DNA of 53,482 bases from Girardia tigrina (Eukaryota), in the NCBI GenBank assembly GCA_001938485.1, contig MQRK01248130.1, forward strand, positions 1 to 53,482, written 5' to 3'. Of this stretch, positions 11-52,059 are shown in pieces. The position numbers and the translations under genes were made by a program. Position 1 is the first letter of the stretch. Each line of letters begins with the position of its first letter. Under the pieces are notes generated by a model that was not told where the DNA came from, made no database searches, and saw nothing but the letters and a program-made list of their open reading frames with translations.

Positions 11-103
11 CGCGACCGTTGCCATGGTAACCGCGACCGTTGCTATGGTAATCGCGACCGTTGCCATGGTAACCGCGACCGTTGCCATGGCAACCACGGT
101 AAC
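11..103. repeat. Tandem 21-bp repeat (4 copies plus a partial), each containing an RFX X-box-like palindrome
   Basis: Units cgcgaccgttgccatggtaac at 11, 32, 53 and 74; core GTTGCCATGG(T/C)AAC; no spacers. Confidence 0.9.
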
Positions 104-110
104 TAATTAC

Positions 111-148
111 GACCCCCCCGGGGGGGGGTCTTGTGGGGAGAAACCCCA
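111..148. other. Two adjacent GC-rich hairpins
   Basis: GA-C7-G9-TC near-palindrome at 111-130 and tgggg-agaaa-cccca at 134-148. Confidence 0.7.
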
Positions 149-500: not shown

Positions 501-578
501 TATATATATTTCCCTCTATTAGATCATATTCCATAAAAGAATATATGGAATATTGTCTAATAGAGGGAAATATATATA
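501..578. repeat. Long hairpin (35-bp arms, 2 mismatches, 8-nt loop) at the 5' junction of PLE copy A
   Basis: 501-535 is the reverse complement of 544-578. Confidence 0.9.
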
Positions 579-794
579 ATGAGTCGATCGAGTAAGGTTC
601 TTGATCATTGGTTATGTTGTAAGGATAGAACCTCATCCATTTCAAAAGATGAGTTTTCTGTTCTACAAGAGGGATTTGATTCACATTACGAACGACAGTT
701 TTGTGAATCTCTACTAATAAGACACTACAACCCATCAATTAACATCCAGAATGGGCAAAATAAGGTTATTTCAATACTTAAAATTTTTAATTAA
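579..794 (+). pseudogene. PLE copy A: C-terminal part of a GIY-YIG endonuclease (5'-truncated)
   Basis: ...LDHWLCCKDR...EFSVL...ERQFCESLLIRHYNPSINIQ matches the PLE endonuclease E-x-L-L-I-xxxx-P-x-I-N-x-Q end; homologous to copy D. Confidence 0.85.
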
Positions 795-930
795 AATATT
801 TTTGCCATTATTACCCAATAATACTTTAATAAATTATTATATTTAATTCGTAATATACCTTTTAAAGTTAATATATCTTTAAAATTGTATTATTAAAACA
901 ATTCAATATTCATATACTAAAATATCCGAA

Positions 931-977
931 AATTGCTGCTGATGATGTATGTAAACATCGAAACATGTCCAATAATT
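931..977 (+). ncRNA. Minimal type I hammerhead ribozyme (PLE copy A)
   Basis: aattgctg-CTGATGA(939)-T-stem II G(t)ATG/taaa/CATC-GAAA-CATG-T-C(969)-caataatt; palindromic loop III, GUC site. Confidence 0.8.
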
Positions 978-1012
978 ATATAAAAAAAAGCTTTAATCAA
1001 ATTATATTTGCA

Positions 1013-1043
<31 letters not shown>

Positions 1044-1986
1044 ACCAAAGGTTTTTAAACACAAAAACAATTTTAGAGATCCTAAATAATTTTAATAATA
1101 ATAATCCAAATAAAAAGTTGTCCAAGTGAACATTACCCCTTGATGTTAATCTTGTTCTTCAATCATAATATTTTTAATTACTCCTAAAAAATAAAAATTG
1201 ATAAAATTTCTTAAGAAAAAGTAATATCAAAAATATTTAAATTTTTATTTAAGATATTCAAAGGGGACCCCGAATGTTCATTAGAAGACACATTATTAAG
1301 AATATAACCAAATTTGCATTTTTATTTGATTGAGATAATTTATTATATTTTCGTTTTAATGAAATAAAATATAATTTTCGAAATGATTTTTCTTTTTTTC
1401 ATATTTGAGAATATTTTTTTCTTTATTTGTAATTGAAAAAAATATAACAAGAAATATTCAAACAAAATTTGTAAATAAATATTCTAAGAAAATTTTTTTC
1501 GATGATTTTTGTGAAACTCTTTTTAAAAAAATATTCTCTCTTTTTTTAATTTAATATTTTTTTCCATTTTTCAAAGAATAATTAAATATTTTTTACAGTA
1601 TTTCTAATTATGGAAATTCAATTTTTTTCAATGGCGACAACTTTGATGCTGTGCACAAATTGAGAATAAATTTTCTTTCTTGCTTTTCAAACGAAGACAC
1701 AAAATTTGAAAAATCATTCATTAAAACAAATTGGAAATGAGCTTATTTTTTGATAAATTAAAAAAAATTGAATAAAATTATTTATTTTTTTGAAAATTAA
1801 TTTCATTCGTAAAATTTGAAAAAATTTCAATAAAATGTTTGTAAATTTATGTTTTAAAAAAATTTTATAAAAAGTCTTTATTATAATTCCTAAATGATAA
1901 TTAAAGTAATAAATAAAATAATAATGATATTTATTATTATTTATGTTATAAAACCAAAGATATGTCATTTCGAAATATATTTTTTC

Positions 1987-2029
1987 ATGATAATATATTT
2001 CGACGGTTTTACCGTTATCCTCAGATCAC
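1987..2029 (-). ncRNA. Minimal type I hammerhead ribozyme (PLE copy B, inverted pseudo-LTR)
   Basis: Minus strand gtgat-CTGAGGA-T-AACGG/taaaa/CCGTC-GAAA-TATA-T-T-atcat; the plus-strand counterpart at about 3047-3078 has lost its core. Confidence 0.75.
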
Positions 2030-2219
2030 TAATTTTTAGCTTTTTATTGTTTATATATATAAAATTGATAATTATGCAATTGATTACGCAAAATTAATCA
2101 CAAACTCATAACAAATTTGTTGACTGCCGTTTGAACACTATTTTTAGTGATACGAGACCTGATTAACAAAGTTTCACACGACACTATCCAAATAATTTTT
2201 TTAAATGCTTGCACATAAT

Positions 2220-2940
2220 ACTGATACAAGTTTATACACATCACCAGACAGTTTTTGTGAGTCAAGATATAAGAGGTTTGCTTTACCATTGTTTTTTCCT
2301 TTCTTCGAATTTTACTAAATCTAATAAAACTATTGAAACGTTGAGTAAATTGTTGAATAACAATGAATATTATGTCTTTTATTGAGAAAATCACTCGTGA
2401 AACTTTAGACAAAATAATTTAAAGTGAACGAATTAAGACTGCTCAGTCTAACGAGACATTTAATTCACCTGTGGATGAAATAGTAATGGATGAAGTCGAG
2501 AAAGATCTTAAGATTGAAAATTCCTACATACCGGGTTACACATTGAGCTTATCTTATTCTGAAGGATTCAAATATCTAACGAATTCTGTTCTTAAAGCAA
2601 CAAATTATCTTTTCAATTTAAAAATCCTTTCTATTTTATTTAATGTTGAAAATAGTTCTGTAATAGATAACCTATTCCTTTAAGTTTGTGTTCGGACGAG
2701 GTTTATTATACGTATAATGGGTGCAATGCCACATACATTAGAGAGATTGGCCGTCATATCTGCAAATGAGTCCAAGAACACACTTATAGAGGGAGTAAGA
2801 ATAATATTGTTGAGCATAGAAAAACTTGTAAATGTGATTTGAGTATAAATGATTTCAAAATTCTGTGCAAGCATTTTAACAATTATTAGAAGAGAGTGTC
2901 ATATGAGAGTTAATAAGGTCTCGTAACACTAAAATTAATT
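2220..2940 (+). pseudogene. PLE copy B: RT thumb, linker and GIY-YIG endonuclease, with stops and frameshifts
   Basis: TDTSLYTSPDSFCESRYKR; CFFLSSNF...LLNNNEY/MSFIEKI; PIPLSLCSDEVY..NGCNATYIREIGRHICK*VQEH...NIVEHRKTC...NDFKILCKHFNNY. Confidence 0.85.
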
Positions 2941-5306
2941 TAATTAATTAACACTTAATTAAATTAAATTAAGTAATGTTAATTTGTTAAGAGTTTTCGA
3001 TTTATTGTACAATTACATAATCACCAATTTCACTTATATAACCAATATGACGGTAAAACCGTCAAAATATATTATCATGAAAAAATATATTTTGAAATGG
3101 CGTATCTTTTGTTTTATAAAAAAATCCATTGTTTTTTAAATTTATTTATTGTTATGTTATGGTGAAGGTTTCGAAATTTATGATTTTTTGTGTAACGGTT
3201 AATTTTTCTCCCTTTCTTACCCAAAGACAGTTGTCAACTTAAATTCGGATCGCTTTTAAAAGTTTTTTTTGAATGATAATTTGCTTATTATGTGTCGCTT
3301 TCGGTTGCCATATTTATGAAAGATATGGGATCATTCAATATTAAAAAATTAATTAAAGAACTAAATAATTAATAATTAAAAGTTAAATAAATTAAAATTA
3401 TGCTCAATTTTTAAACCCGAGTTATCGAGTAATTGCCTTGTTTTGATAACTCAATCGAGAGTTAGTATTTTCCAGGTTGTGTCGTGTTGGTGTGCCGGGG
3501 TGTGTCAGACAGTAGAAAGAAAAATTATCTGAGTAAAATAGCTGACTCTGATTGGTTAACCAATAGAAGCGAGGTTCATAAATAATATAATTATTTTTAA
3601 AATCACTTTTTTGTTAATTAAAAATTTTTTAAATCGCATTTTTAACTAAATTTTTGAAATTATTAAAAAGTTTAAATTATTGTAAACAAATGTTTTTATT
3701 GATTATACTAAAATTTCATAGCTCAAATTGGAAACACATTTTTGTGAGCTAAACAATATTAAAATATTGAAATTTTTTGTGATGGAGTTATTTGTCGAAT
3801 CTATCGAATTATGAAAAAAATATATAACTGAATAATTAAATTTCTCAACTTGAGCCAAAATAATATCAACAATCAAAAACCTTTTTAAAGGGACCCAGCA
3901 CGAAAAGTAGCAAGTCTAAATCTACTGCCATGTCTTTGATATTACCGATCAGTTTCTCGGGAAACCTGGGCATTGTACAAAACAATGACATAAATAATTT
4001 ATTATTTATTAATAATATACTGTAATATATCAATTTATTTGATAATATAATTATGAAAAATATTAAAAAATTATTAAAATTAAATTATAATATTATATAA
4101 AAATAGTAATTTATTAAATAGTTTTTTATAATTCAATAAAATTTCAAAATAATTACAAATTTATTATTTTCAATTTTTTGGGGAAAAATTTAATAAATAA
4201 GAGGAAATGAATTGCATTTTTTTGATTTTTAGTTAAGGAAACTCAATGGAAAATTTTGATGAAACAATTTCTGAATTTAAGTTGATATTTGATTAATGAT
4301 AGAAAGAAAGATAATTTTTAAAGAAATTTCTATTTTTCCAAAATCATAAGAGATCATAAAACTTTGAATTTTCTTTAATTATTTGAGAAATTATTTAGAA
4401 AAAAAATCCAATTTTCGATTTCTTATTATATGTAATTAAATTAAAGATAATTGTCATTTTGAACATATATAACAATTTTATATAAACAGAAAAGATAATA
4501 ATTTTTGTAATGTGATTTTCAAAAAAATAATTTTATATTTATAATTTTTTAATTTTTGTATTAAAAAAATTTTCTAATCAAATAAAATTTTGAAAATAAA
4601 ATTAATAAATACTGTAATTATCAAAAATTTTTTATAATAATACTTTAACATTCATATGTTAATTTCCGATCTAAATAAAGCAGAAATAAAATTATATTTA
4701 TTTTCCTTAATAAATATTGATATTTAAAATTGCTTTTAAATTTTAATAACTAGAATGTTTAAAAAATAGATTTTTTTTCATTTACTTATATGATAATAAT
4801 GAAAAATTAATTATTATTTATGATTAATTACTAGTAATAGTACATTAATGTAAATAATATTTTATATAATAATAATTATTATTATGATTATTAAAATACA
4901 AATTCTTTATATGAAAATTTAACAAAATAATGAAATACCACATAAATAATATTTAAAAAAACAATTTTAATATTAAATATTCGACTAATAAAAAGAAGTA
5001 CGAATTGGATATTAAAGTTTGGGTGATAATACTGCAAAATATAAAAATAAAATTTTATTTGATAGGTTTCTTTCCATCATTTATATAACAGCCCAAGCAT
5101 CAACTAGAAATTGGAAGTCTTCTCTTCGTCACTTCTATTCAATTGATTTAAAATTTATTAAAGACATATATTTGTCACTTCAAAACTTCCTGTGAGATAT
5201 TATTCTTATTTGTTTAAATTCACCGAAACCGGTGATAGTTGTTGATTATCGCAGTCAAAGAGGATCGCTCCAGAGATTAATAATTTTCTTGGTGGTTTGA
5301 TCGATT

Positions 5307-9852: not shown

Positions 9853-12640
9853 TAAATTATAATAATTACTATTTAAAAATTAAAACAAAAGCTTTCAAAG
9901 ACGAAAATTGAGCTCACCTGTCATATATGATGGTTCTTTTCTAGTAAAGCAATAGTTGAACTAATGATGGAAAGATTGTGAACGAACGCAGAAGATTAAG
10001 TCTTCGACCGGATCATATGGTAACAGACGGAATACGCATTGCAACCGAAAATAAATAAATTTATTGAAGCGCAAATAATAACAGTTCGATTAATTCTAAC
10101 ATGAGATCAAACGGTTTGTAATTCGATCAATCGGATTATTCAACAAAAACAGATTAATTCACTATTTCGAGAGTATCATAGCCATAATGATCCACAAAAA
10201 TATTTGTCCTCACACTCAAAATCCTTAAACATTGTTCTCTTTATTACTATATTAGTTATTATTATTATTACAATATTAAATATTATTCAAATAATTAGAA
10301 AATGCTATAATTAGGGTATGCTATTTTTGAACACATTAAGACGACAAACTTATTGAGTGAGTTTAGATGACTCAAATTTCATCTTAACTCAAATCACTGC
10401 TTACCTGTACAAGCAGATTTAAATTTTTAATTTTTTATGACCTGGCGATAACGGTTACACCATTGAAATTAAATGTATGCAACGATATAAATATTATTAT
10501 ACTCATTATTATTTTATACTAAATTGTTAATTATTTCTTTTGGGAAGAAAGATTTTAAAAACAACAACTTACGAAATAGATCAATTCTAGCCGTAATTCT
10601 TAACCATGATAATCAAATTACATTAGTCTTAACAACATTTATAAAATAAAATCCGTGCTGCTTATGGAAATTTAAATTGTCTCACTTGATGTACTCATTT
10701 GGGGCATTTTAAGTTTGTTCCTATTATCATGAGACTCATCTTGTCTTATTGCAACACCGAATGTCATACGAAAATACCCTAATGCTTTGGGGACTCGTTT
10801 TGGGAAATTTCAAGATTAAATAACATTTATGTTAATTAATCATTTAAAACAAGTTTCAAACAGTCTATCCGGACACTCGCGATTTGGGACGACTGGTAAA
10901 TATTATATTATGAATTAATATGAACAAGTATTTCCCTTTCCCGAGATGGACATGATCGATGGATATACAATGATCGAACTGGAAAGAGTTTTCTATTCAA
11001 CTCAAACAAGATAAACGAAATTAGGATCAATAATGAGATAACAAAGTTTTCTGCTTTATTATAATTTATTTTTGGTAGAATAGAAAGATATGAATTAATA
11101 AAATTGTTTATTATTTTACAATCTATAAAAAAATTTTTTAAAAATCAATTAAAAAAAGAAAATTAATAACCAAAAAAAGATATTTATCTATTATCTGATT
11201 TATAGATAAATGCCAATATTTATATTTTATTAAATGATCATTTAATTTTTTTATATTTCATTAATAAATTTGATTTTTATTATAATTTATTTACAAATTT
11301 ATTATTTTTTATCATAATTTTTTATTAGTAGAAATAATATATTTTTTCAATATATTATTAAATATATTTTTAGAAAATATTAAATTCAATTAAAACACTA
11401 TATTTCATTTGATCTCCAAGTTACCCCGAAGACCAGATGGTGGTAGTAGAGACATGGGGCCCAGTAACTTTGTGATGTGCCCATGTTAAATTATTCAGAT
11501 CAATCATTATTTTTATTTGGCTAAATCTCAAGATCATAAAGACTTTTTGTATCGTCAGTAATCGAAATATTATTCAAATTTCAGTCAAAAATCAAAAAAA
11601 AACAAATCGATTTCAAACAAATTCAAATTCGATCAACAAATAAATGTGAAACAATAATTTCTTTAAAAAAATTTCACAATAAATTGTTTTAACAATTCAA
11701 AAAATGCGTCTCAAAACAATTCGGCAATCGTACAATAAATCGTCTCAATTCGTCAATTAAAATTCGAAATAAATATTCGTTAACAGAAAGAATAATTTTC
11801 TATTAATCGCATTGTAAGTAGCGTTTATGCCACTTTCATTATTATCACATTCTAAAGCCATAATTTAACACTACCAAAAATTTATTAATATAACAATTCA
11901 CATTTCTAAAACAAATTTTCCTGTTAATTNNNNNNNNNNNNNNNNNNNNNNNNNNNNNNNNNNNNNNNNNNNNNNNNNNNNNNNNNNNNNNNNNNNNNNN
12001 NNNNNNNNNNNNNNNNNNNNNNNNNNNNNNNNNNNNNNNNNNNNNNNNNNNNNNNNNNNTATAATTTTTAATTTTTAAAAATATTTAATAGCAAATTAAC
12101 ATAAAAATATTTAACCCTTTAAATTAAAAAAAATAATAAACTATTCAGGCGAGATAAAAATTTAAAATTAACCCCTCAAACGCATAAACCGTGAGAGATC
12201 ATAAAAAAAGAGATTAAAAAAAGTGATTTTTAAAATCACTCGATTACATATGATTGGTCGACCAATCAAAATGAGCCATTTTGATTCTTTTTCTTTTCCA
12301 GTAAAACAGGTACACACCAATGCGATACACCCAATAATTTACCTGATGAACACATGACCTTTGACTCGGCCATTGCTTTACAAAGGTATCTTTGTTCGAG
12401 TAAACAATTTTACAAAATTTAAATTCAAATAATATTCTTTTAATTATTTTTTTTACATACATAACATTGTTTATCTTATGCCTATTCATAAAAAGCAGCG
12501 AGATCAGCGAGATCAGTCATTGTTATTCGAAATAAAACCATTTACAGTTTTAAATGATAAATTTGAAAGATCCGATTGATTTTGGGCAAAAATGAGATGG
12601 TATGTTACGAAGTATAAATAAAAATAATGAATATAATAAA

Positions 12641-12691
12641 AATTTATTGTGATTAATTTCGACGGATCAACCGTCATCATCAGACTGAATT
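12641..12691 (-). ncRNA. Minimal type I hammerhead ribozyme (copy C, left repeat)
   Basis: Minus strand CTGATGA-T-GACGG/ttgat/CCGTC-GAAA-TTAA-T-C. Confidence 0.85.
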
Positions 12692-12754
12692 AACAATGAT
12701 ATACTCGCGTTTATATATCAAATATATATAATATCAAATATATCAAATACCGCT

Positions 12755-13468
12755 TTGTATAATGTAAGTGATGTTGATTGTTTTCATTTATGTTTTGCTA
12801 TTTCTGAAAGTATTAGTAAAAAAGCATGTAATGATAAAATTGTGACACAAAATAAAAAGTTAAATAATTTACGGAAAATTTTTGGTGTATTTAAATTTGA
12901 TTTACAAAATACAATTTTAAATTTAAGTGATAGTTCATNATCAAATGAAGAAATATCTATATTAAAATTTGGTCCTAAGCATAGTATTAGAATGCGATTT
13001 AATGAATTTCAATTTAAATCAAAGGTAGAAAATATGTTTAGATATTATCACGCAAATGCTGATTTAGTTAATAATCTAAATTTTGAAAATTTAAAAATTG
13101 TATCTAGATCATGTAAGATTGGAAGTTTGTTTAGTAGTAAATCTATCACTCCAACTGGGTTATGTTCCAATTTAGTTTATCAATATAAATGTAATGGGTG
13201 AGACGCCGCATACATCGGAGAGACTTGTCGTCATCTCTGTAAACGGATTCAGGAACATAATCGCAGGGAAAGTGATAGCAATATTGCTCAACATAAGAAT
13301 AACTGTTTGAATAGTAAAGTTGACGTAAGTAATTTTAAGATTTTGTGTTCACAATTTGATAATTACTGGGAGAGGGTGATGTGTGAAGCATTGTTGATTA
13401 AATCTTTTGATCCTAAAATCAATGTCCAAACACCATCCTCTTCAACTTTATTGAAAGTATTTTCATGA
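12755..13468 (+). pseudogene. PLE N-terminal region fused in frame to a GIY-YIG endonuclease; one internal TGA at 13199-13201
   Basis: ILNLSDSSxSNEEISILKFGPKHS (PLE N-terminus), then KIGSLFSSK..PTGLCSNLVYQYKCNG*DAAYIGETCRHLCKRIQEH...NIAQH...CEALLIKSFDPKINVQ; no RT motifs. Confidence 0.9.
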
Positions 13469-13521
13469 TTTAAATGACATAAACATATGTTTTGATATAT
13501 AAACGCGAGTATATCATTGTT

Positions 13522-13572
13522 AATTCAGTCTGATGAAGACGGTTGATCCGTCGAAATTAATCACAATAAATT
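13522..13572 (+). ncRNA. Minimal type I hammerhead ribozyme (copy C, right repeat)
   Basis: CTGATGA(13530)-A-GACGG/ttgat/CCGTC-GAAA-TTAA-T-C(13562); stem I is short. Confidence 0.85.
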
Positions 13573-14817
13573 CTAATGATCGTTTTTTGTTTTTTAAAAA
13601 TAGTATATCATCATTTTTTAAATATTTATAATAAAAATTTAATTAAAAATTCTGTTAAATCCACTTTATTAATAATAATAATAATTTAAATTAAATGTTT
13701 TATTGTCAATTTTCAACATTTAATTTGAATTTTTGAGAAAAAGATAAATATTGTTATAAATATTAATTTATTTTATTATTGTAAACATAAAATAAAATAA
13801 ACAATTAACAAAAAACTATTTAATAGATCATTAAATTTTTAATTAATAGAAATAAGAATAAAAATATAAAATCAAATGAAAAATTATTTTTATTTCTCAT
13901 AATCTGATTGTAAATTGAATGGACAACCGAAGATCGGATAAAAAATGGAATAAATGGGAATAATCAGCCGGACTAATGGGCGATACCATTGCGGTTTGAT
14001 TGCAAATTGCAAAATTTTCCTCAAAAAATCAAGCTTCCCAAATGATCTATACGGAGATTTATTCATCAGATCTTAAAATTTAATTATTTTTTGGATCAAT
14101 TTGTCACAATCGGATTTACATCGGCCTGGCAAATATCTTCTCGGAGTCCCCCACTTACTTTATGTCATTCCAGAGAACAGGATATGCTGGATAGACCAGT
14201 TGGCCCCTCTCGACAAACTAATTGAATACAGCGATTCAATTTGGGACCCAAAACAAGATAAACACCAATTTTCGTAATAAGTACATATCAATAATTACTT
14301 GAAAAATAAATAAAAAATACATAGACCCAAATGAATAGAACGAGTTAATAGAACAAATCATAAATAATTTATTAGCAGAGGAAGTTAGAAAAAACAATAG
14401 AAAAAATTATTTTCAAATGAGCACTTAACCTAAAATTTCGAAACAAAACAGAAGAAAAAACTGATAGGTTGGTAAAAGTTACAAATTATTTATTTAAATA
14501 ATTTAAAAAAATTGAAATTAATATTATATTATTATTATTTTTTCAAAATATTTTTTTAAATTATAAAATTAATCTTTGTTGTGAAACGTTTTAAATGAAT
14601 AATGAATAAATTGATCTAAGATGATCACTAATTTATTTTCATGCTTTAAATAATCGAATTAAAATCGACGAGTTCATTTGAAAATTAAACTGGATAAAAA
14701 AGTAATAAATTATATGAAGTGATTATTCGAAGGTAAATTTATTCATTAATATATATATATATATATANNNNNNNNNNNNNNNNNNNNNNNNNNNNNNNNN
14801 NNNNNNNNNNNNNNNNN

Positions 14818-18575: not shown

Positions 18576-19847
18576 TTAGGTTGGAAACTATGAAACGGGC
18601 GTTGAATGAAAATAAAAAAAAGAAAAGCGTTAATTTTCACATTATTTATTTTATTCAATTGAAATAATTCCCATTGGCATCTACTACTTTTTGCAAACAA
18701 TTGGGCAAATCATATATGCCTTTTTGAAAAAAATCCTTATTTTTTGAGTTAATAAACAATTCAAAGTCTTTTACAATATCATTTTGGTTCTTGTATTTTT
18801 TTTCTCTTAAAAATAATTCATAATTACGAAAAAGGTAGTAATCGGTAGGTGAAAAATCAGGTGAAAATGGAGGATGTAGTAAAATTTCATATTGTAGAGA
18901 ATTTAATTTGTCAACAGTAATCGAAGCTTTATGGGGTCTTGCGTTATCGTTCAATAAAATGAGACCGTGCCGATTGAGCAATACTGGTTGTTTTTTTTAA
19001 GTTTCTCATGCATCACATCAATTTCACGACAATAAGACATCGCTGTTATAGTTTCTCCTGGTTGTAGAAAGGAATAATGGATCACTCCTTGGGCATTCCA
19101 CCATATGGTGACCATAATTTTTTTTTGATGAAATTTCGGTTTCGGGGTGTGTCCTGGGAGTGTATTCTTACCTTCCCATTGGCTTTATCATTTTCGATTG
19201 TCATAAAAAATCCACTTTTCATCACAAGTGATGATTTGGTGTAAAAATGGCAACCGAGTATTGAGAAGTAACAAAGATGCTGCTTTTGCGGTCGATCATC
19301 TGCAGTTCCGTCAATTCATGTGGCACATATGAATCCATTTTTTATACTTTATTTATTGCACACAAATGTTTTAACACAGCTGTATGACTAGTTCCTAGTT
19401 TTGACCCAAGTTTTCGAATAGTTGTGTGTGGATCGGATTCCACAGTTGTCCTTAATTCCTCATAATCAATATTGGTTGGTGGTCTACCTCCAGGCTTATT
19501 AACGATACTCAAATTCGCAGAACGAAATTTTTGGAACCAATATCGAACATTTTTTTCATTGGTTGATCCATCTCCGAATGCCTGATTAATATTTCTTGAA
19601 GCTTGAGCTGCTGTACGATTTAATTTAAATTCGTACAAAAAGAGTAGATGCAAATTGCATTTTGTTTCCATCTGGTTTAGGATAAAAATAAAATAAAATG
19701 GGATACCAACACAAAACAACTTTACAAAATTACCTTTAAGCTTTACCTTTACCTTTAAGCTTTATAAATAAAAATATTGAATTATTGAAATATCACAGAT
19801 GAACACAGACTAAACAAAAAACGCCCGTTTCATTGTTTCCAACCTAA
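18576..19847 (-). mobile_element. mariner (DD34D) transposon with a disrupted transposase (ATG 19671 to stop 18655)
   Basis: 28-bp TIRs ttaggttggaaac(t/a)atgaaacgggcgtt, TA TSD; ITCDEKWIFYDN, LLNDNARPH, HPPFSPDFSPTDYYLF. Confidence 0.95.
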
Positions 19848-25857: not shown

Positions 25858-27756
25858 TAGGGCACGGATTTTATTGACATTTCATTTTTTAAGACGTCTT
25901 CCAAGTGTATTGGTTGTATATGAACACGTTTCACCACATTTTAATACGATTAGGGCAATTTTTATTTGTCATTATTTTACCTTTTTAGGTCATTTTATTT
26001 TTTGTTAGGTTATTTTTACATATTTTCTATTTCTATATTTATTGAATTAAAAAAAGATTTAAAATCTAATATTATCAATTGTTTAAATAATATAAAATTT
26101 GTCAATATTTCAAAAGTCCTTGTAAATTATTTAAATTATTTGATATACCCAAAAAAAGCCAACAACATCACAACAGTTGCGAAATTTAGCAAATGAATTT
26201 GTAACCGATATATTCTCTACTGATGGAAAAATTTTGTTTTGCAAAACTTGTGATACGAAGGTAGCGGCTGAAAAGCGATTTACAGTGGAGCAACATGTTT
26301 CAAGAAAGAAGCATATTATGAGCTTACAACGAATGGATGCTAAAAGCAAACTTTAATGAATTCTTTCACTTCGACAAGTCACAGTCCTTGTAAATGTTCT
26401 ATATATTTGTGTGAAACCTTGTTGTCCGCAAATATTCCATTAGGCAAATTAAATAATCTTAAGTTTCAAAAGTTTTTGGAGGATTATACTGATAAATGTA
26501 CTGATAAACATACTGCGAAAGACATATGTTAAAGTTTGCTATAAAGAAACTATTCTTAGAATACGTGATTTAGTAGGCGACAAAAAAATATGGGTTACAA
26601 TCGATGAAACTATTGATTCGAACGGTCGTTATAAAGAAAATGTAGTAATCGGAACTTTAGAATGTGGAAGGGAAGGTAATATGTTTCTTTTAACAACAGA
26701 AATATTGGAAAAGGTAAACCACTCGACTGTCTGTAAGTTATTTGACGAATCTATGCTTCTTTTATGGTCAAATGACATACCACGGGATAATATTATACTT
26801 TTCTTAACTGACGCTGATCCGTATATGGTGAAGGCTGCAATTGGATTAGAGTACTTTTATACAAAAATGATTCACGTTACTTGCATTGCTCATGGTTTAC
26901 ATCGAACTGCGTAGGAAATCCGAAAATATTATCAAAAAGTCGATCTGCTTATAAGCAGTGTCAAAAAGGTTTTTTTAACAACACCATCTCGGGTAGAATT
27001 GTTTCGCAATCTTGCCTAAATTTATCTCTTCCTCCTCAACCAATAATAACAAGATGAAGAACATGGTTATGCGCTGCAACTTATTATTCAGAAAATTTTA
27101 AAATACTGAAAAACGTCATTGAAAAACTAGATGCTGAAGAATCAGACTGCGTGAGGATTGCGCAGGAATGCTTTAGGGATATTAATATTGAAGATGATCT
27201 TGCCTATATTAAAGCGAACTTTCAAATTATCTCAACGATTATAACAAAATTAGAAAAAAGAGGATAAAGTTTAAATAGTTAATTAAATATTAATTGTATT
27301 GACAGAGTTCATGATGTACTCAAGTTGTCACAAGGATTCATTGGAAATGCATTTTATTAAAAGTTTATAAAAGTATTCGAGAAAAATTCAGGATTTGCTA
27401 CAATTATAAAGATCGATGTTGTTTTAATTGGAAAATCTTCAAATTGGAAGTTACTATATGGGGTAATTTTGTTGAGTGATGCATGCTTTTTTAAATATGC
27501 ACCGGTTACATCCGTGGACCTTGAAAGATCATTTTCAATGTTCAAAAATCTTTTTGCTGATAATCACTGATCATTTACTTAGGAAAATCTCTAGATAACT
27601 TTTGTTACACATTTTAATAATGTGGAATAATGAATGAATAAAAAAGCTTCTTAAGTTTTTGTTTAAACTTTTGTAGGTCATATTTTTTTGCATTTTTAAT
27701 GTCATTTTTATCAATTTTTAAAGTCATTTTTTATGGTTATTAAATTCCGTGCCCTA
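25858..27756 (+). mobile_element. hAT-superfamily transposon (CGGBP1/DUF659-like transposase), decayed
   Basis: TIR tagggcacgga; 8-bp TSD ctgataac/ctgataag; FSTDGKILFCKTC, IWVTIDETIDSNGR, FLTDADPYMVKAA, HVTCIAHGLHR, APVTSVDLERSFS. Confidence 0.92.
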
Positions 27757-35319: not shown

Positions 35320-36854
35320 CAGTCGTAGCCATAATTCACCAGCCACCCCTAAAAATACTGAGATTTTTGACTAACTGATATTGTAACGAAGTATTAAGGA
35401 TATATTCAGTACATACAAATTATAAGAAGAATACAGGCATGGATACACAGTTCAAACACTCTTCCACTAGCACTTTATATGGCCACCTTTTGCATTAACC
35501 CTTTCTCTCGCAGTGTTCTTTTACAACAACATTAAGTTAATTAGCTGAGAAATTTTAAGCAACAGAAATTCCGCTATTTATTTTAGTGTTGTGCTACAAC
35601 AACATTGCGAATATTCATATTGATTTAGGGAAACTTGAATGAATTAATTTTATGTTTTCACGCTTGGAGTGTAATTAAAAATAACATGTAAACTTAATGT
35701 TGTTGTAAAACAACATTCCAAGAGAAATGGTTAATCACTCCTGCCAATCGGCGTGGCATTGACGCGATAAGATTACCAGTGAGTTCGGAGCTCATCTCCT
35801 GTACCCAAACACGTTTAATCACGTCAAGTAGGTCATCATATGATGTGGGGGCATGTTCAGCAACCTTTTATTTCACTATTCTCCAACAATTTTCAATCGG
35901 CGATAAATCAAGAATGTTGATCTCGTTTGCTTCCAACCAGGCTTTGTTTAGTCACGATTGATGAAATGGAGCCTCGTCATGTTGGAAATAATTGCACTGA
36001 CGCATTTGAAGGAAGCCTTGGACCTTATCGCGAAGAATGCCGCTGTACACAGGCGAAGTGATAGAAGTTCCCTTGGGACAGAACCAAAGACCACAGCGAC
36101 CTCTGGCAGTAATTGCGGCCCAAATCATAACTTTCGGTGCACTCCACACAGTAGGAACAGTGTATTGTGGCCTAAAGCAGCCAGTGCACCGTGTGGATCC
36201 ATGTGTCTTGCTGACAGATTGTGGTTTCATCACTGAACATCACCGAATTCCATTTATCCACTAACCAATATTGGTAGGCTTTTGCAAACGCGAGCCTATC
36301 ACGAATATTCTTCGACAATAAACGGGGTTTCTTGGCAGGCTGTACTATCGAAAGCCTCCTTCAACCAGACGTCGACGAATGGTTCATGTGCTAGGCAATT
36401 TATCAATGTTAGTAGGAAGATCAACTTGTATTGGTCTTGTAGGATCTAAAAATGACTCGATCATTCACCTTGCTTGTGATACGCGGTCTTACACTGCATT
36501 TCGTATAGGCAAAGGCACCGGTGGCTTGATGTAGACGGAGAGTGTCGGCTACTGCAGTGCGGCAAATATTGAATCGCAGGGCAATTGCACGGTTCAAGAC
36601 TCCAGTGTTGTGTAAAGCGACGATTTTTGCCCTCAGAGTGGGTAAAAGTTGGTTGCCAGTCATGATGGAATAGTCATAAATACTTGACACAAATACTTTT
36701 ATATATCATAATAACATAGTGGGTATGCTATTAAAGCTGTATTCTTATTGGATGTTGGTTAAGAACATTATTTACATGCACTTACACACACACGCACGTA
36801 AATATTAATTTTCTTTACAATGCAAGGGTGGCCCGTGAATTATGGTCATGACTG
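35320..36854 (-). mobile_element. Tc1 transposon with a decayed transposase (36663 to ~35467)
   Basis: TIRs cagtc(g/a)t.(g/a)ccataattcac with TA TSD; VMFSDET, VMIWAAI, FQHDEAPFH, DLSPIENCW, SMPRRLAGVI. Confidence 0.92.
35499..35730. mobile_element. piggyBac-type MITE nested in the Tc1 transposase
   Basis: TTAA TSD at 35495-35498 and 35731-35734; ~40-bp imperfect TIRs starting CC; removing it restores GVINAKGG. Confidence 0.88.
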
Positions 36855-42849: not shown

Positions 42850-44089
42850 TTAGGTTGTTCGATATGAAACGGGTCAAACTTCACACCTTACATTTCAATC
42901 GCGTATAACTTAACTTTGAACTATCGTATGAAAATAAATAAGGTATTTCTTGACAGATATATTATTCCTCTTTAAAAATCAATTACTTAATTTCAAATAT
43001 ATTGAATAGTTTCTTGTCAACAAACAATCAAACAGCGCAATGGAAATCAGTGAAATCAGAATTTTAATGAAATATGAGTTCCACCGTGGAGCCACAACAC
43101 GTCAGNNNNNNNNNNNNNNNNNNNNNNNNNNNNNNNNNNNNNNNNNNNNNNNNNNNNNNNNNNNNNNNNNNNNNNNNNNNNNNNNNNNNNNNNNNNNNNN
43201 NNNNNNNNNNNNNNNNNNNNNNNNNNNNNNNNNNNNNNNNNNNNNNNNNNNNNNNNNNNNNNNNNNNNNNNNNNNNNNNNNNNNNNNNNNNNNNNNNNNN
43301 NNNNNNNNNNNNNNNNNNNNNNNNNNNNNNNNNNNNNNNNNNNNNNNNNNNNNNNNNNNNNNNNNNNNNNNNNNNNNNNNNNNNNNNNNNNNNNNNNNNN
43401 NNNNNNNNNNNNNNNNNNNNNNNNNNNNNNNNNNNNNNNNNNNNNNNNNNNNNNNNNNNNNNNNNNNNNNNNNNNNNNNNNNNNNNNNNNNNNNNNNNNN
43501 NNNNNNNNNNNNNNNNNNNNNNNNNNNNNNNNNNNNNNNNNNNNNNNNNNNNNNNNNNNNNNNNNNNNNNNNNNNNNNNNNNNNNNNNNNNNNNNNNNNN
43601 NNNNNNNNNNNNNNNNNNNNNNNNNNNNNNNNNNNNNNNNNNNNNNNNNNNNNNNNNNNNNNNNNNNNNNNNNNNNNNNNNNNNNNNNNNNNNNNNNNNN
43701 NNNNNNNNNNNNNNNNNNNNNNNNNNNNNNNNNNNNNNNNNNNNNNNNNNNNNNNNNNNNNNNNNNNNNNNNNNNNNNNNNNNNNNNNNNNNNNNNNNNN
43801 NNNNNNNNNNNNNNNNNNNNNNNNNNNNNNNNNNNNNNNNNNNNNNNNNNNNNNNNNNNNNNNNNNNNNNNNNNNNNNNNNNNNNNNNNNNNNNNNNNNN
43901 NNNNNNNNNNNNNNNNNNNNNNNNNNNNNNNNNNNNNNNNNNNNNNNNNNNNNNNNNNNACCATTGAAATGGCAACAGTGTGTTGACAACATGGGGGGAT
44001 ATTTTGATTAAAAATAAAATCTTATTATTTAAAAAAAATCGATTTACATTTTACTTTAATTTTGACCCGTTTCATATCGAACAACCTAA
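42850..44089 (+). mobile_element. Young mariner transposon (cecropia-type); interior unassembled
   Basis: Perfect 29-bp TIRs ttaggttgttcgatatgaaacgggtcaaa with TA TSD; ORF 43040-44011 MEISEIRILMKYEFHRGATTRQ...PLKWQQCVDNMGGYFD. Confidence 0.95.
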
Positions 44090-48534: not shown

Positions 48535-48705
48535 TCGGATCTTCATTCTCGAACTTCTTTTCATCCCGTTCTCTAACTGCTTCCCGCCGAAGATGAGTCA
48601 CTGTTGTCTTGGTTGAATGCCTTCTTTGTTCTGGATCTTCTCCTTGACGTCCTCGATTGACTCATTGGCATCCACATTCCCCGAAAGTGTTCTAATGAAA
48701 TTCTG
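48535..48705 (-). pseudogene. Ubiquitin or ubiquitin-like domain pseudogene
   Basis: QNFIRTLSG[deletion][37 protein letters not shown]. Confidence 0.85.
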
Positions 48706-51533
48706 TCGGGTCTGGAGACACCCCGATCCATGACCCGAGTTTACATTATTTAGATTGTTACTAATATACATATTTTTAATATCGTACCCGGCATTGGAAT
48801 TCCCACCAAACATTCCCAAAGAACAATTTACCAAACAACCATCACGCTGCGAGCCCCGAAGGACGAGTCGCTCCCGGGTGCTGGGCCCATTATTGGAACG
48901 TTGCAGCCCGTCACGCGATTCTCGCTCGTACCCAAAAAACCCCTGGCGTCAACCTTGGGAAACCCCTTCATTTAAATTTAATATTAAATTACTCTTTAAA
49001 CATAAACCCCACAAATTTAAAACATATATGACACAGCAATTAACATTAACCAAAACAAAAATTATAAGAATATCCTCCATCAGGGGGAGGACTGACGGAA
49101 TCTCTTCCAAACAGAATGATATACAATTTACTTGACGATAATTCGATTCTCGTGAATTTCTCCAACAGTTGCGGAGATGAGAGAACATTGTAGTGGGAAA
49201 ATTGAGTTTTGTCTTTCGTTTTCTTTAAAATATGAAGCTTATTTAATTCACTGTCTAATATGATCATTTATTTCGGAACAGATAATAGACAACTGTTTTC
49301 TTTACCAATAATTCGTTATCGAAAATAAATCTCTTTTCATAGTTGAGTGATAGAGGATCGTCGATTTTGTGCCATAATTCTAAGGCTTTCTCATCATTAT
49401 CCATTTTTTGGATTTTTGTAAATCACAAAACAGTGAGTATAAAAATATTCTAAAAATTTGGCAATTGCAAAAGAAAAGAATTAAAAATACAAAAATAATT
49501 TTTTTATTGCTTAATAATTTGTTTTTTAATGAAATATTTTAGAAAATTAAAAAATAATAATAATAAAATTACAAATAAAATTATTTAATTAAAATCAGTA
49601 AAAATATAAAAATTATAACAAAATATAAAAATTATATTATTTGCTTCTAATTTTTGAAATTATTTCGACAATATTATGTTGAAAATAGTTTTCAAATATT
49701 TCAATTAATCTTTATATAAATGTGATTGTCTTTTATCTATTTGCTTTTCATTTAGAGAAGATGTGATCAAACAGAACAAAACTTTACAAACCTTTCTCAA
49801 TCAAAGGAAGGGTCAGTGTCGTTTTTTTTCCAAATTTGATATAAAAGCATGAAAGGATACCGTTAGTGAAGGAGGTTTTGAGGAGGAACGGGAGCACTCA
49901 TCTACTCTCATTAGGACGTTCAATCCACTTTGAGATCATCATTGAAAAGGCGTGCTATCAGATTTTCTAAATGCGCGGTGGCAACTACCTCCTTTAATAA
50001 ATATATTTTTTTTTAATTTTTGCTAGTTTTATAAGGACTTATTTTAGTATTTTTTATAAATTTCCTTGTTTTTATTTTTTAGAGGATCTTGAATATTCTC
50101 ATAATAAACGTTTCATTTAATATTTTTACTTCAGCCATTTCATTATTTAAGTTTTTGTCAGAAAAATTAATTAAAAAGATTAATTATTAAATAAATCTTT
50201 ATAAATTCATAGAAAGTTCTTCAATATGTAACACATTTTCGATTATTCTAATTTTATTGTATTTTGTGAAGTTTCATACAAAAAGTTGTTATTTTATTTA
50301 TCTTTTCCCATGGGAAAACATTATTAACATTCTCTATCTTATTAATTTTGGATTACACGAAAAGCAAACAAAAAATCAGTTAAACGAAGTCTCATCGGAA
50401 ACTTAAAAGACAATTTATTGTTAAATTTCAAAACTGTTTTTCATAAACATATAATGTCTTTTAAATTTTATTTTCTATTTTTCTTTTTATAAAAGGAATT
50501 TCTTGTTTTACAACAATTAAAACAAATAATTCGGTTTCTCAAATAATATAAATAAAATAAATTATATCATTTCGTAATTTATCAAATCATTTTTAGATAA
50601 TGAGAAGTAAAAAAATTAATAAGTTAATTAATTATGATTTAACCTAATTGATTTATATATAAAGTACATTAGAGGACGGTTACTCGAACAGTACCGTACA
50701 AGATGTTCTGGTACCATTAACCATAATTTTTCAATAGGAAGCTGTATTTTTTACCACATATTTCTTTTATATACCTAATTGTAGTGCTCGCTTCAATTTC
50801 TATTAAAAAGAAAAACTCTTTATCATAAAACACTCAAAACGTGTGAAATAAAAAATGTAGAAAATTGTTTTAACGAATGTACAAAGCTATATAAGTTTGA
50901 TTGTGAGGTGCCGGCAACCGGACTGAGTGGCAGCGACCAGCACCTCTTAAATGTGCCGGGACTTGGTGCCCGGAAAGATCGACGTGTCAGTTCGACGCGG
51001 TCCATGTACCGATCGGGTCCAGTGACCATCGGTCGACACGTCATCGGATGTCGGTCCCGCAACTGACTCGTGGCGGTTAAGAGTTGTATTTTGAGTTGTG
51101 TTATCGATCAGTTGATCGATTTGTGTTTCATCTGTATACCGATACCTCGAGTGAGGTGTTTGTCGGTCTGAACCACACTATTGCATTTGTGGATCGATAA
51201 AAGGAATCACAAAATTTTCGATAAAGAATAAAAAAAAGGACGATTATGTTGAGAAGGATTGTAATTGAATTCAAAACATTAAAATTTAAAACTGTTACAC
51301 ACTTAAATATTTATTTAATTTAATTAAACAAAAATCAGTTTTTTAAAAGTTTTTTTTCAATATCGGCCGTTTGACCGGAGCACCACAGAATGTTAATAAA
51401 AGTTTTTACTCGTTCACGTTTCATCGTTAAAAAATATTGAACACAAAAAAGGAATTTAAAAAAAACAGAGAAAACAGAATGAAATTCCGTCAGATCAACA
51501 ACCTGCGAAGTCAAGCTGGAGCAGTACGAATGC

Positions 51534-51584
51534 ACTGATAAACTAAATTAGCTTGTACACTTAAAGCTAATTTAGCTTATCAGT
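51534..51584. repeat. Fold-back hairpin at the 5' truncation of PLE copy D
   Basis: 21-bp arms 51534-51554 and 51564-51584 with 1 mismatch; the right arm is endonuclease coding sequence. Confidence 0.88.
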
Positions 51585-51867
51585 TTAAATATCACAAGTG
51601 TGAATTCTTCTACATTGCAGAAACACATCGTCATCTCCGTACTAGAATAGCAGAACACACTCAAATGAGTAGAAACATCTCCATTCTCGATAATATATAT
51701 TGTTGTCGTGATCGTGAAAAAAAAATTATAAAAAAGAATTTAAAGTGCTAAGTAAAACTTTGGACACAAATTTCGAGCGGATAATCACTGAATTATTATT
51801 TATTAAGCAATTAAAACGATGCTTAAATATACAAACTGATTTATCTAAACACGTTAACGTTTTTTAA
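51560..51867 (+). pseudogene. PLE copy D: GIY-YIG endonuclease domain, frameshifted
   Basis: LKANLAYQFKYHKCEFFYIAETHRHLRTRIAEHTQMSR...CCRDR / EFKVL...ERIITELLFIKQLKRCLNIQ. Confidence 0.88.
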
Positions 51868-51939
51868 AAATATGGAAATTACTTATGGTGTAACATTCAG
51901 ATAACCATTTAAATGACTTGTAATTTTGTTTAAATATTC

Positions 51940-51981
51940 ATTTAACTGACGATGCCTGTAAAGGTGAAAATAGTTTTAAAT
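51940..51981 (+). ncRNA. Minimal type I hammerhead ribozyme (PLE copy D)
   Basis: atttaa-CTGACGA(51946)-T-GCCT/gtaa/AGGT-GAAA-ATAG-T-T-ttaaat; 6-bp stem I. Confidence 0.8.
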
Positions 51982-52009
51982 AACATTATTGAAAAATGGC
52001 GTTTTTGCT

Positions 52010-52059
<50 letters not shown>

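What the first reader, a model, noticed from the sequence alone, without database searches (positions are those of the whole stretch)
12641..13572. RT-less Penelope-like unit: endonuclease-only frame between two outward-facing hammerhead ribozymes
Seen: 82-bp inverted repeats (1 mismatch), each holding a complete CUGAUGA...GAAA core, enclose one reading frame in which the PLE N-terminal region (NLSD..S.EE.SIL..G motif) joins the linker and GIY-YIG domain in frame near 13080-13095. The whole RT is absent, although related copy B retains RT thumb motifs. Short tatcaaata repeats mark the 5' junction and there is no TSD. Known: PLEs carry minimal hammerheads in pseudo-LTRs that can be inverted. 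Inference: the inverted repeat implies a PLE-type integration, so the RT-less RNA may have been mobilised in trans. That would be a non-autonomous family keeping its nuclease and ribozymes, intermediate between full PLEs and non-coding retrozymes. Transcripts from either strand would self-cleave at their 3' ends. The first in-frame ATG is at 12992.
Basis: partly seen in the sequence, partly recalled or inferred. Interest (0 to 1): 0.85.

Follow-up and report, generated by a model that had tools for sequence, protein, structure and literature searches.

The report
Internally deleted Penelope-like retroelement copy
This is one broken copy of a Penelope-like retrotransposon that has lost its reverse transcriptase and sits between inverted terminal repeats and a 15-base target duplication; this is a known by-product of how these elements insert, and nothing yet shows a new kind of mobile element.

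Summary
Two 82-nt inverted arms (1 mismatch) each carry a minimal hammerhead motif and enclose a 260-codon frame. In that frame, a Penelope-like-element (PLE) N-terminal region runs directly into the linker and GIY-YIG endonuclease, and the whole reverse transcriptase is missing.

Three points were missed or wrong:
- The frame has one internal stop and lacks its natural start.
- The element continues 54 nt past the right arm as a PLE "tail".
- With that tail, the insertion is flanked by an exact 15-nt direct repeat.

The layout is TSD, inverted 5'-truncated copy, microhomology junction, main copy, pseudo-LTR (pLTR) with hammerhead, tail, TSD. This is the published PLE insertion pattern. [quoted passage not shown]

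Same-family relatives in public data (96% identical) continue into RT. No second copy of the fusion turned up in the window or in any searchable collection, but those collections barely cover this organism.

A transcript spanning both arms folds into an 81-bp panhandle, so 3' self-cleavage is unlikely.

Verdict: an ordinary deletion derivative. A trans-mobilised RT-less lineage is not excluded but has no support.

The parts
12632..12646 (.). Left copy of the 15-nt target-site duplication. Its last 6 nt overlap the outer end of the left arm, so target and template end share microhomology.
   Evidence: Exact 15-mer present only here and at 13627-13641 in the window. Control boxes never reached 14 nt.
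12641..12722 (-). Inverted, 5'-truncated copy of the element's 3' end (inverted pLTR fragment). It carries a minimal hammerhead motif at 12651-12683 on the minus strand.
   Evidence: 82 nt, 1 mismatch to the right arm. Hammerhead pattern match. The only mismatch is the bulged base between core positions 9 and 10.1.
12715..12749 (+). Head-to-head junction between the inverted copy and the main copy. It holds three copies of a 10-nt motif (ATATCAAATA): one at the inner end of the arm, one as filler, and one at the start of the main copy.
   Evidence: Motif positions. Homology to the family ORF starts at about 12746.
12746..13468 (+). Broken PLE ORF remnant, given as one part: partial N-terminal region fused in frame to linker and GIY-YIG endonuclease. 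Breaks: one 5' truncation (about 100 codons and the natural start missing), one internal deletion (about 470 codons, the whole RT with thumb), one in-frame stop, no frameshift. There is also one ambiguous base (N).
   Evidence: 96.5% identity to residues 102-215 of P0026 and 94% to residues 1-122 of P0023. Matches residues 113-204 and 687-805 of the 806-aa P0008. P0026 is collinear with P0008 into the RT. Stop count.
13491..13572 (+). Right arm: the pLTR segment of the main copy, with the minimal hammerhead motif at 13530-13562. In same-family relatives the ORF start codon lies inside the CUGAUGA box.
   Evidence: P0001, P0024 and P0025 begin with the translation of this motif.
13573..13626 (+). 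'Tail': 54 nt beyond the arm that continue into the first 32 codons of the family ORF and then stop.
   Evidence: P0001 residues 1-32 match 13533-13628 at 91%, and nothing of residues 33-119 follows. The tail concept is from PMC8557442, PMC11167929 and PMC3846280.
13627..13641 (.). Right copy of the 15-nt target-site duplication.
1941..3124 (+). Copy B, the comparator. It belongs to an older, related PLE lineage with the same head-to-head layout: an inverted copy at about 1941-2224 and a direct copy at about 2220-3124. It keeps thumb, linker and EN, and its hammerhead cores are degenerate.
   Evidence: Arms 78 nt, 90% complementary, plus further inverted segments. Thumb and linker matches to P0016 and P0030. 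66% nt identity to the unit's linker/EN.

Best explanation
This is a single insertion of a canonical (C-terminal endonuclease) Penelope-like element, made in one integration event and defective from the start or soon after.

Inferred mechanism, following published PLE biochemistry:
1. The element's endonuclease nicked both strands of an AT-rich target 15 nt apart.
2. Each nick primed reverse transcription from inside the template's 3' region, at two different start sites. One lies about 35-40 nt and the other about 94 nt into the next ORF. The difference between them is the 54-nt tail.
3. The two cDNAs met head to head at a 10-nt microhomology. This left an 82-nt inverted pLTR fragment on the left and a 5'-truncated main copy on the right.

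The main copy lacks the RT because of one internal deletion. The most likely causes are a template jump at short sequence similarity during that same reverse transcription, or a later microhomology-mediated genomic deletion.

The result is a dead by-product. It has no natural start codon, no RT, one in-frame stop, and hammerhead motifs locked in a long hairpin.

Shown: the anatomy, the homologies and the TSD. Inferred: the order of events and the origin of the deletion.
For: - Anatomy: TSD, inverted arm, microhomology junction, ORF remnant, pLTR with hammerhead, tail, TSD.
- It matches the published PLE insertion pattern: an inverted 5'-truncated copy next to the 5' end, an optional tail and a variable TSD (PMC8557442; PMC3846280).
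- Both target strands are cleaved and extended, with two internal RT start sites that define the tail. The ORF start lies inside the hammerhead (PMC11167929).
- Same-family relatives are full-length in type. P0026 (96.5% identical) continues into RT motifs and is collinear with the 806-aa P0008.
- Copy B shows the same head-to-head layout without the internal deletion, so the layout comes from integration, not from an RT-less design.
- No second copy of the fusion was found in the window or in any collection searched.
- The frame is interrupted once and lacks its start.
Against: - The fusion is in frame, though that has a 1-in-3 chance by itself.
- Only one stop has accumulated, and the endonuclease signature columns line up with those of relatives. 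Some selection or recent activity therefore cannot be excluded. The insertion is young, however (arms differ at 1 of 82), so lack of decay says little.
- The source genome could not be searched. The public collections hold only about eight short contigs of this family, so the absence of other fusion copies is weak evidence.
- The DNA of a full-length same-family copy was not available, so microhomology at the deletion is inferred from protein comparisons only.
Confidence: 0.7

Rival explanations
1. Non-autonomous RT-less lineage. An RNA already lacking the RT was copied and inserted by the enzymes of full-length elements, and this locus is one member of a multi-copy family that keeps N-terminal region, endonuclease and hammerheads.
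For: - The TSD and tail show that the composite went in by a genuine PLE integration.
- PLE terminal repeats can carry unrelated inserts in trans (PMC3846280).
- Non-autonomous PLE derivatives are known (Chlamys/MRC1; non-LTR retrozymes).
- The fusion is in frame and the copy is young.
Against: - No other copy of the fusion was found anywhere I could look.
- This copy is itself 5'-truncated and has a stop, so it cannot be a source copy.
- The deletion can equally have arisen during this very integration.
- Nothing shows selection on the nuclease.
Confidence: 0.15
2. Assembly artefact: a full-length or rearranged PLE was collapsed by the assembler, so the fusion does not exist in the organism.
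For: - PLE tandem and inverted structures are known to upset assemblies (PMC8557442).
- The unit contains one N, and the window has several N runs.
Against: - The similarity shared by the two sides of the fusion is far shorter than any assembler word.
- Frame, arms, tail and TSD form a coherent whole.
- The fusion is flanked by about 340 and 370 nt of clean homology on either side.
Confidence: 0.05
3. A host-retained (domesticated) stand-alone endonuclease gene, or a protein in which the in-frame UGA is read as selenocysteine, as in some Naiad PLEs.
For: - Stand-alone PLE-type endonucleases and UGA-recoding PLEs exist (PMC8557442).
- The single stop is a UGA.
Against: - No SECIS or any other Rfam family was found in or near the unit.
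- Close relatives have an ordinary sense codon in that column.
- There is no natural start and no intron or gene context.
- The locus lies among transposon debris.
Confidence: 0.03
4. A plain 5'-truncated copy in which the upstream half of the frame is the RT thumb rather than the N-terminal region, so there is no internal deletion.
For: 5' truncation is the commonest PLE defect, and copy B is of that kind.
Against: - The upstream half matches residues 113-214 of 806-818-aa RT proteins and residues 102-215 of P0026, which lie upstream of the RT.
- The thumb-bearing relatives P0012, P0016 and P0030 match only from the linker onward.
Confidence: 0.01

Closest known systems
Pen2_Av derivative on scaffold 304 of Adineta vaga (Arkhipova et al. 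2013, PMC3846280)
   Same: Flanked by inverted pLTRs and a short TSD (10 bp there, 15 bp here). [quoted passage not shown] The pLTR holds the first dozen codons of the ORF, and an optional tail extends them.
   Different: Different host and family. Here the inverted pLTR is only 82 nt, the tail is 54 nt rather than about 31 nt, and the deletion removes exactly the RT and leaves N-terminal region and endonuclease in one frame. The microhomology here is inferred, not shown at DNA level.
PAc, Poseidon element of Anolis carolinensis (Frangieh et al. 2024, PMC11167929)
   Same: The ORF starts inside the hammerhead motif, with the cut site a few codons downstream. Both target strands are cleaved and extended. 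Reverse transcription starts at two internal sites whose spacing gives the tail. The target is AT-rich.
   Different: PAc is a full-length, biochemically active element. The start sites there lie 111-118 nt into the ORF, against about 35-40 and 94 nt inferred here. Nothing here was tested biochemically.
Minimal hammerheads of metazoan PLEs (Cervera and De la Pena 2014, PMC4209133)
   Same: The conserved boxes, an extra base between positions 9 and 10.1, a G10.1-C11.1 pair and a palindromic loop 3. Pairs of motifs on opposite strands 100-700 bp apart are reported there.
   Different: Helix II is 5 bp (7-8 bp in Schistosoma). Helix I is only 2 bp followed by an interrupted extension. No activity data.
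Non-LTR retrozymes and non-autonomous Chlamys elements such as MRC1 (bioRxiv 10.64898/2026.07.22.740005; PMC8557442)
   Same: PLE-derived sequences without RT that keep pLTR or hammerhead parts.
   Different: Those are non-coding, multi-copy and in direct or tandem orientation. This unit is a single copy with a coding remnant and inverted arms.
Chlamys-3_cRei copy with a 2.84-kb internal deletion (PMC8557442)
   Same: An internally deleted PLE copy present in a genome (and transcribed there).
   Different: That is an N-terminal-endonuclease clade in a green alga. Expression of the present unit is unknown.

Membership tests
Canonical C-terminal-EN Penelope-like element (insertion of) | PLE-type reverse transcriptase in the single ORF | tested here: not met
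   No RT match in the unit or elsewhere in the window. RT is present in relatives P0008, P0010, P0014, P0022 and P0030 (RVT_1). The unit is therefore a derivative, not a complete member.
Canonical C-terminal-EN Penelope-like element (insertion of) | Conserved N-terminal region upstream of the RT | tested here: met
   phmmer: query residues about 20-120 match residues 113-214 of 806-818-aa RT proteins (E 7e-11 and 4e-8). 96.5% identity to P0026 residues 102-215. The first ~100 residues are missing.
Canonical C-terminal-EN Penelope-like element (insertion of) | C-terminal GIY-YIG endonuclease with cysteines between GIY and YIG (CCHH motif) | tested here: inconclusive
   The 94%-identical relative P0023 passes Pfam GIY-YIG (28.6 bits, cut-off 22.6). 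The unit's own pieces give only a weak Eco29kI hit (E 0.021) because the domain is interrupted by the stop. Signature columns align with relatives. No CX2-5CxxC linker motif is seen, as in Penelope/Poseidon. No solved structure was found by sequence.
Canonical C-terminal-EN Penelope-like element (insertion of) | pLTR, often with an adjacent inverted 5'-truncated copy | tested here: met
   82-nt inverted arm with 1 mismatch, outer end equal to the element's 3' end. The same layout occurs in copy B. Definition.
Canonical C-terminal-EN Penelope-like element (insertion of) | Optional tail extension at one end | tested here: met
   13573-13626 continues into codons 14-32 of the family ORF on the right side only. 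It is 54 nt, against the usual 30-40 nt.
Canonical C-terminal-EN Penelope-like element (insertion of) | Target-site duplication of variable length | tested here: met
   Exact 15-nt direct repeat at both ends. No control pair reached 14 nt.
Hammerhead ribozyme (minimal type I of PLEs) | Conserved boxes CUGAUGA and GAAA, helix II closed by G10.1-C11.1, and a cleavage-site H | tested here: met
   Present in both arms. 3 matches against 0.04 expected.
Hammerhead ribozyme (minimal type I of PLEs) | Extra base between positions 9 and 10.1, and a palindromic loop 3 with closing pair (dimer-forming) | tested here: met
   The extra base is U or A, and it is the only arm mismatch. AUUAAU is a 6-nt palindrome. 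Other palindromes occupy the same place in two other PLE remnants of the window. Criteria.
Hammerhead ribozyme (minimal type I of PLEs) | Helix I able to form | tested here: inconclusive
   Only 2 contiguous pairs next to the core, then an interrupted AU-rich extension (read). The fold is no better than shuffles (z about 0), and only helix II appears in the centroid structure.
Hammerhead ribozyme (minimal type I of PLEs) | Match to a curated Rfam hammerhead model | tested here: not met
   No hammerhead family at gathering score or at E up to 10. This is expected for motifs lacking helix III, but it is still a negative result.
Hammerhead ribozyme (minimal type I of PLEs) | Self-cleavage | not testable with these tools
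   Published single minimal motifs were inactive in vitro. Here the arms pair with each other in any spanning transcript.
Retrozyme / non-autonomous PLE-derived family | Many copies sharing the same RT-less structure | tested here: inconclusive
   No other copy in the window or in the protein and contig collections.
Retrozyme / non-autonomous PLE-derived family | Hammerheads in direct orientation, so that one transcript can be cut at both ends and circularised | tested here: not met
   The two motifs lie on opposite strands. A transcript holds one sense and one antisense copy, and these pair with each other.
Selenoprotein-encoding PLE (as in some Naiads) | In-frame UGA with a SECIS element, conserved among copies | tested here: not met
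   No SECIS match. Relatives carry a sense codon in that column.

The most novel reading that the evidence does not exclude
The fusion is not a one-off. An RNA lacking the RT but still encoding part of the N-terminal region plus the GIY-YIG endonuclease is propagated by the machinery of full-length elements. This would form a protein-coding, non-autonomous PLE lineage, intermediate between full PLEs and non-coding retrozymes, with this locus as a dead member.
Probability: 0.1. Interest if true: 0.6.

Novelty: new member of a known kind. Interest (0 to 1): 0.18.

Why it matters
As it stands, the locus is a clean, well-delimited example of how Penelope-like elements insert. It shows priming on both strands, two internal start sites, a tail, a microhomology junction and a 15-nt target duplication in a single 1-kb unit. 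That makes it useful for annotation, and it supports the two-start-site model in a family other than the Anolis element.

It would matter more only if the same RT-less fusion proved to be multi-copy. That would show a PLE derivative keeping its nuclease while borrowing the polymerase, and it would bear on how retrozymes arise from PLEs.

Tried and rejected
- **Rfam.** The whole window at gathering score and the unit at E up to 10 gave no hammerhead and no SECIS. A first fixed-spacing hammerhead pattern found nothing because the spacing was wrong.
- **Pfam on the unit's own two pieces.** Only a weak Eco29kI (GIY-YIG clan) hit.
- **Search for more copies of the fusion.**
  - Word-indexed protein search with the N-terminal piece.
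  - The same search with P0026 residues 95-215, to reach proteins of 211-672 aa.
  - The same search with P0023, to reach proteins of 67-213 aa.
  - These returned only N-terminal-only or endonuclease-only fragments.
- **Search for related loci.** The metagenome scan by protein and hammerhead-arm DNA pattern scans of metagenome, prokaryotic-genome and viral contigs found nothing.
- **Tool unavailable.** As a result I could not compute silent versus replacement changes, check the deletion borders at DNA level, or test for splice-site dinucleotides.
- **PDB sequence search** with P0023 gave nothing meaningful.
- **Folding the unit by reference** failed on the N. I folded it in a script with the N left in place.
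- **Readings rejected.** A plain 5' truncation with the upstream half being thumb is refuted. Selenocysteine recoding is rejected. I did not identify the organism, because the tools give no taxon for the matching contigs.
- **Restrictions observed.** The masked N runs were left alone, and no contig looked human.
- **Note on the break rule.** The piece references in my calls and the printout therefore end at the stop. Early in my working I also noted where it lies. Neither place is repeated in the notes or in this report.

Full report
**Observation.** The window is AT-rich (about 27% G+C) eukaryotic DNA full of transposon debris.
- At 12641-12722 and 13491-13572 lie two inverted arms of 82 nt with one mismatch.
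- Each arm, read outward, carries in order: the CUGAUGA box, one extra base, a 5-bp helix II closed by G-C, GAAA, a UUAA loop closed by A-U, and a C at the cleavage position. This pattern occurs three times in the window against 0.04 expected. A relaxed form occurs four times against 0.53. The other hits lie next to other endonuclease remnants.
- These features are the ones Cervera and De la Pena list for minimal PLE hammerheads: the extra base between positions 9 and 10.1, the G10.1-C11.1 pair and the palindromic loop 3 (PMC4209133).
- Rfam recognises no hammerhead, even at E 10. The fold is no better than that of shuffles, and helix I is weak. 'Complete core' is therefore correct, but 'working ribozyme' is not shown.

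**The frame.** Between the arms one + frame runs for 260 codons with a single internal stop and one N. Shuffles give 24 stops on average and never fewer than 9, and the other two frames have 17 and 53. This is coding sequence, or was until recently.
- An exhaustive phmmer search with the upstream piece returned 22 proteins.
- The long ones (P0008 at 806 aa, P0010 at 818 aa, P0022 at 757 aa) carry RVT_1. They match the query's first ~100 residues at their own residues ~113-214, upstream of the RT.
- The query's last ~40 residues match the linker just before the GIY-YIG domain of P0012, P0016, P0017 and P0018.
- tblastn of these proteins against the window shows P0008 residues 113-204 and 687-805 in the unit and nothing of the ~480 residues between them.

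**Same-family relatives.** The 90% clusters of P0001 and P0023 hold eight short metagenome-derived proteins.
- P0026 (384 aa) is 96.5% identical to the unit over its residues 102-215. It then continues, where the unit does not, into the region collinear with the RT of P0008. A full-length-type family therefore exists, and the unit is a recent derivative of it.
- P0023 is 94% identical to the unit's linker and endonuclease. It is uninterrupted and passes Pfam GIY-YIG.
- P0001, P0024 and P0025 begin with the translation of the hammerhead motif itself. In this family the ORF starts inside the CUGAUGA box, as in the Anolis element PAc (PMC11167929).

- P0001 residues 1-32 match 13533-13628, so the element runs 54 nt beyond the right arm and then stops. 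This is the PLE 'tail'.
- Directly after it, at 13627-13641, lies an exact copy of the 15 nt found at 12632-12646. These are the only two copies in the window. None of 1940 equally spaced control box pairs, nor 320 equally AT-rich ones, shared more than 13 nt. This is a target-site duplication, so 'no TSD' is wrong.
- The left copy overlaps the arm's last 6 nt, which means target and template end share microhomology.
- At the inner end of the left arm, three copies of a 10-nt motif bridge to the main copy, whose homology to the ORF begins about 100 codons in. The main copy is therefore 5'-truncated as well as internally deleted.
- Breaks in the ORF: one 5' truncation, one internal deletion, one stop, no frameshift.

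**Interpretation.** The order of parts is TSD, inverted 5'-truncated copy, microhomology junction, main copy, pLTR with hammerhead, tail, TSD. This is the standard complex PLE insertion (PMC8557442).
- It fits the finding that a PLE protein cleaves and extends both target strands and starts reverse transcription at two internal sites. I infer that the arm's outer end and the tail's end are those two sites.
- Copy B (1941-3124) has the same head-to-head layout but keeps thumb, linker and endonuclease. The layout therefore does not depend on being RT-less.
[quoted passage not shown] That is the same kind of object.
- Protein comparisons suggest that the two sides of the deletion resemble each other over a few codons. 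That would suit a template jump or a microhomology deletion, but I could not see the parental DNA.

**The family claim.** No other copy of the fusion exists in the window. Three protein searches tuned to different length ranges and four contig scans found none. The claim is therefore unsupported rather than refuted. An in-frame fusion has a 1-in-3 chance, and a young insertion (arms 1/82 apart) is expected to show little decay.

**The ribozyme claim.**
- A + strand or - strand transcript through the unit contains one sense and one antisense motif. ViennaRNA pairs 81 of the 82 arm positions with each other (-130 kcal/mol, against -15 for the arm alone).
- Single minimal motifs were inactive in vitro.
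- For PAc, cleavage was not needed in vitro, and no RNA ends were seen at the cut site.
- Self-cleavage at the 3' ends is therefore unlikely. A long hairpin RNA is the more probable product (inference).

**Other readings.** The single stop is a UGA, and some Naiad PLEs read UGA as selenocysteine. Here there is no SECIS and relatives have a sense codon in that column, so it is a plain nonsense change. By motif content (cysteines between GIY and YIG, no CX2-5CxxC linker motif) the family resembles Penelope/Poseidon. No phylogeny was made.

**Verdict.** This is a real, neatly delimited, but ordinary defective PLE insertion, a new member of a known kind. The RT-less non-autonomous lineage remains possible (about 10-15%) and can be settled by counting fusion-bearing loci in the source genome.

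Noticed in passing
window 579-1040: Another 5'-truncated PLE 3' end. It has the C-terminal half of a GIY-YIG frame (ORF 579-794), a hammerhead-like motif at 939-969 with an ACAUGU palindrome in place of AUUAAU, and then a (TA)n run. Helix II of this motif does not pair cleanly.
   Followed up: partly
window 501-578: A near-perfect 35-nt palindrome (94%, 8-nt spacer) sits exactly at the 5' end of the 579 remnant. It recalls the palindromes at inverted PLE junctions that have been ascribed to self-priming (PMC3846280).
   Followed up: no
window 1941-3124: Copy B is a head-to-head pair of 5'-truncated copies from an older related lineage. Its arms are 78 nt at 90%. One arm still reads CUGAGGA...CGAAA, and the other has lost both boxes. 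Its loop-3 palindrome is AUAUAU.
   Followed up: partly
window 51557-52056: A fourth endonuclease remnant (51557-51864), a hammerhead-like CUGACGA...GAAA near 51947, and then (TA)22 at 52013-52056. Two of the four PLE ends abut TA microsatellites, as reported for several PLE clades.
   Followed up: no
window 18655-19719 (-), 43040-44011 (+): Mariner/Mos1-type transposase pieces (HTH_48, E 1e-14; weak DDE_3). A second mariner-like start at 43040 runs into the masked N run 43106-43959, which was neither filled nor looked up.
   Followed up: partly
window 35952-36690 (-), 26681-26914 (+), 48598-48834 (-): Tc1-like transposase pieces, a DUF659 (hAT-associated) piece and a ubiquitin-like piece. All score below Pfam cut-offs and are probably pseudogene fragments.
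   Followed up: partly
window 11-128: A 21-nt tandem repeat of four copies (92% matches) at the window start, followed by a C-run/G-run palindrome near 113-128.
   Followed up: no
protein P0029 (ENA contig, relative of 13127-13557): The public gene call reads through TGA as tryptophan, so the caller applied genetic code 4 to an AT-rich eukaryotic contig. This is an annotation artefact and says nothing about recoding.
   Followed up: yes
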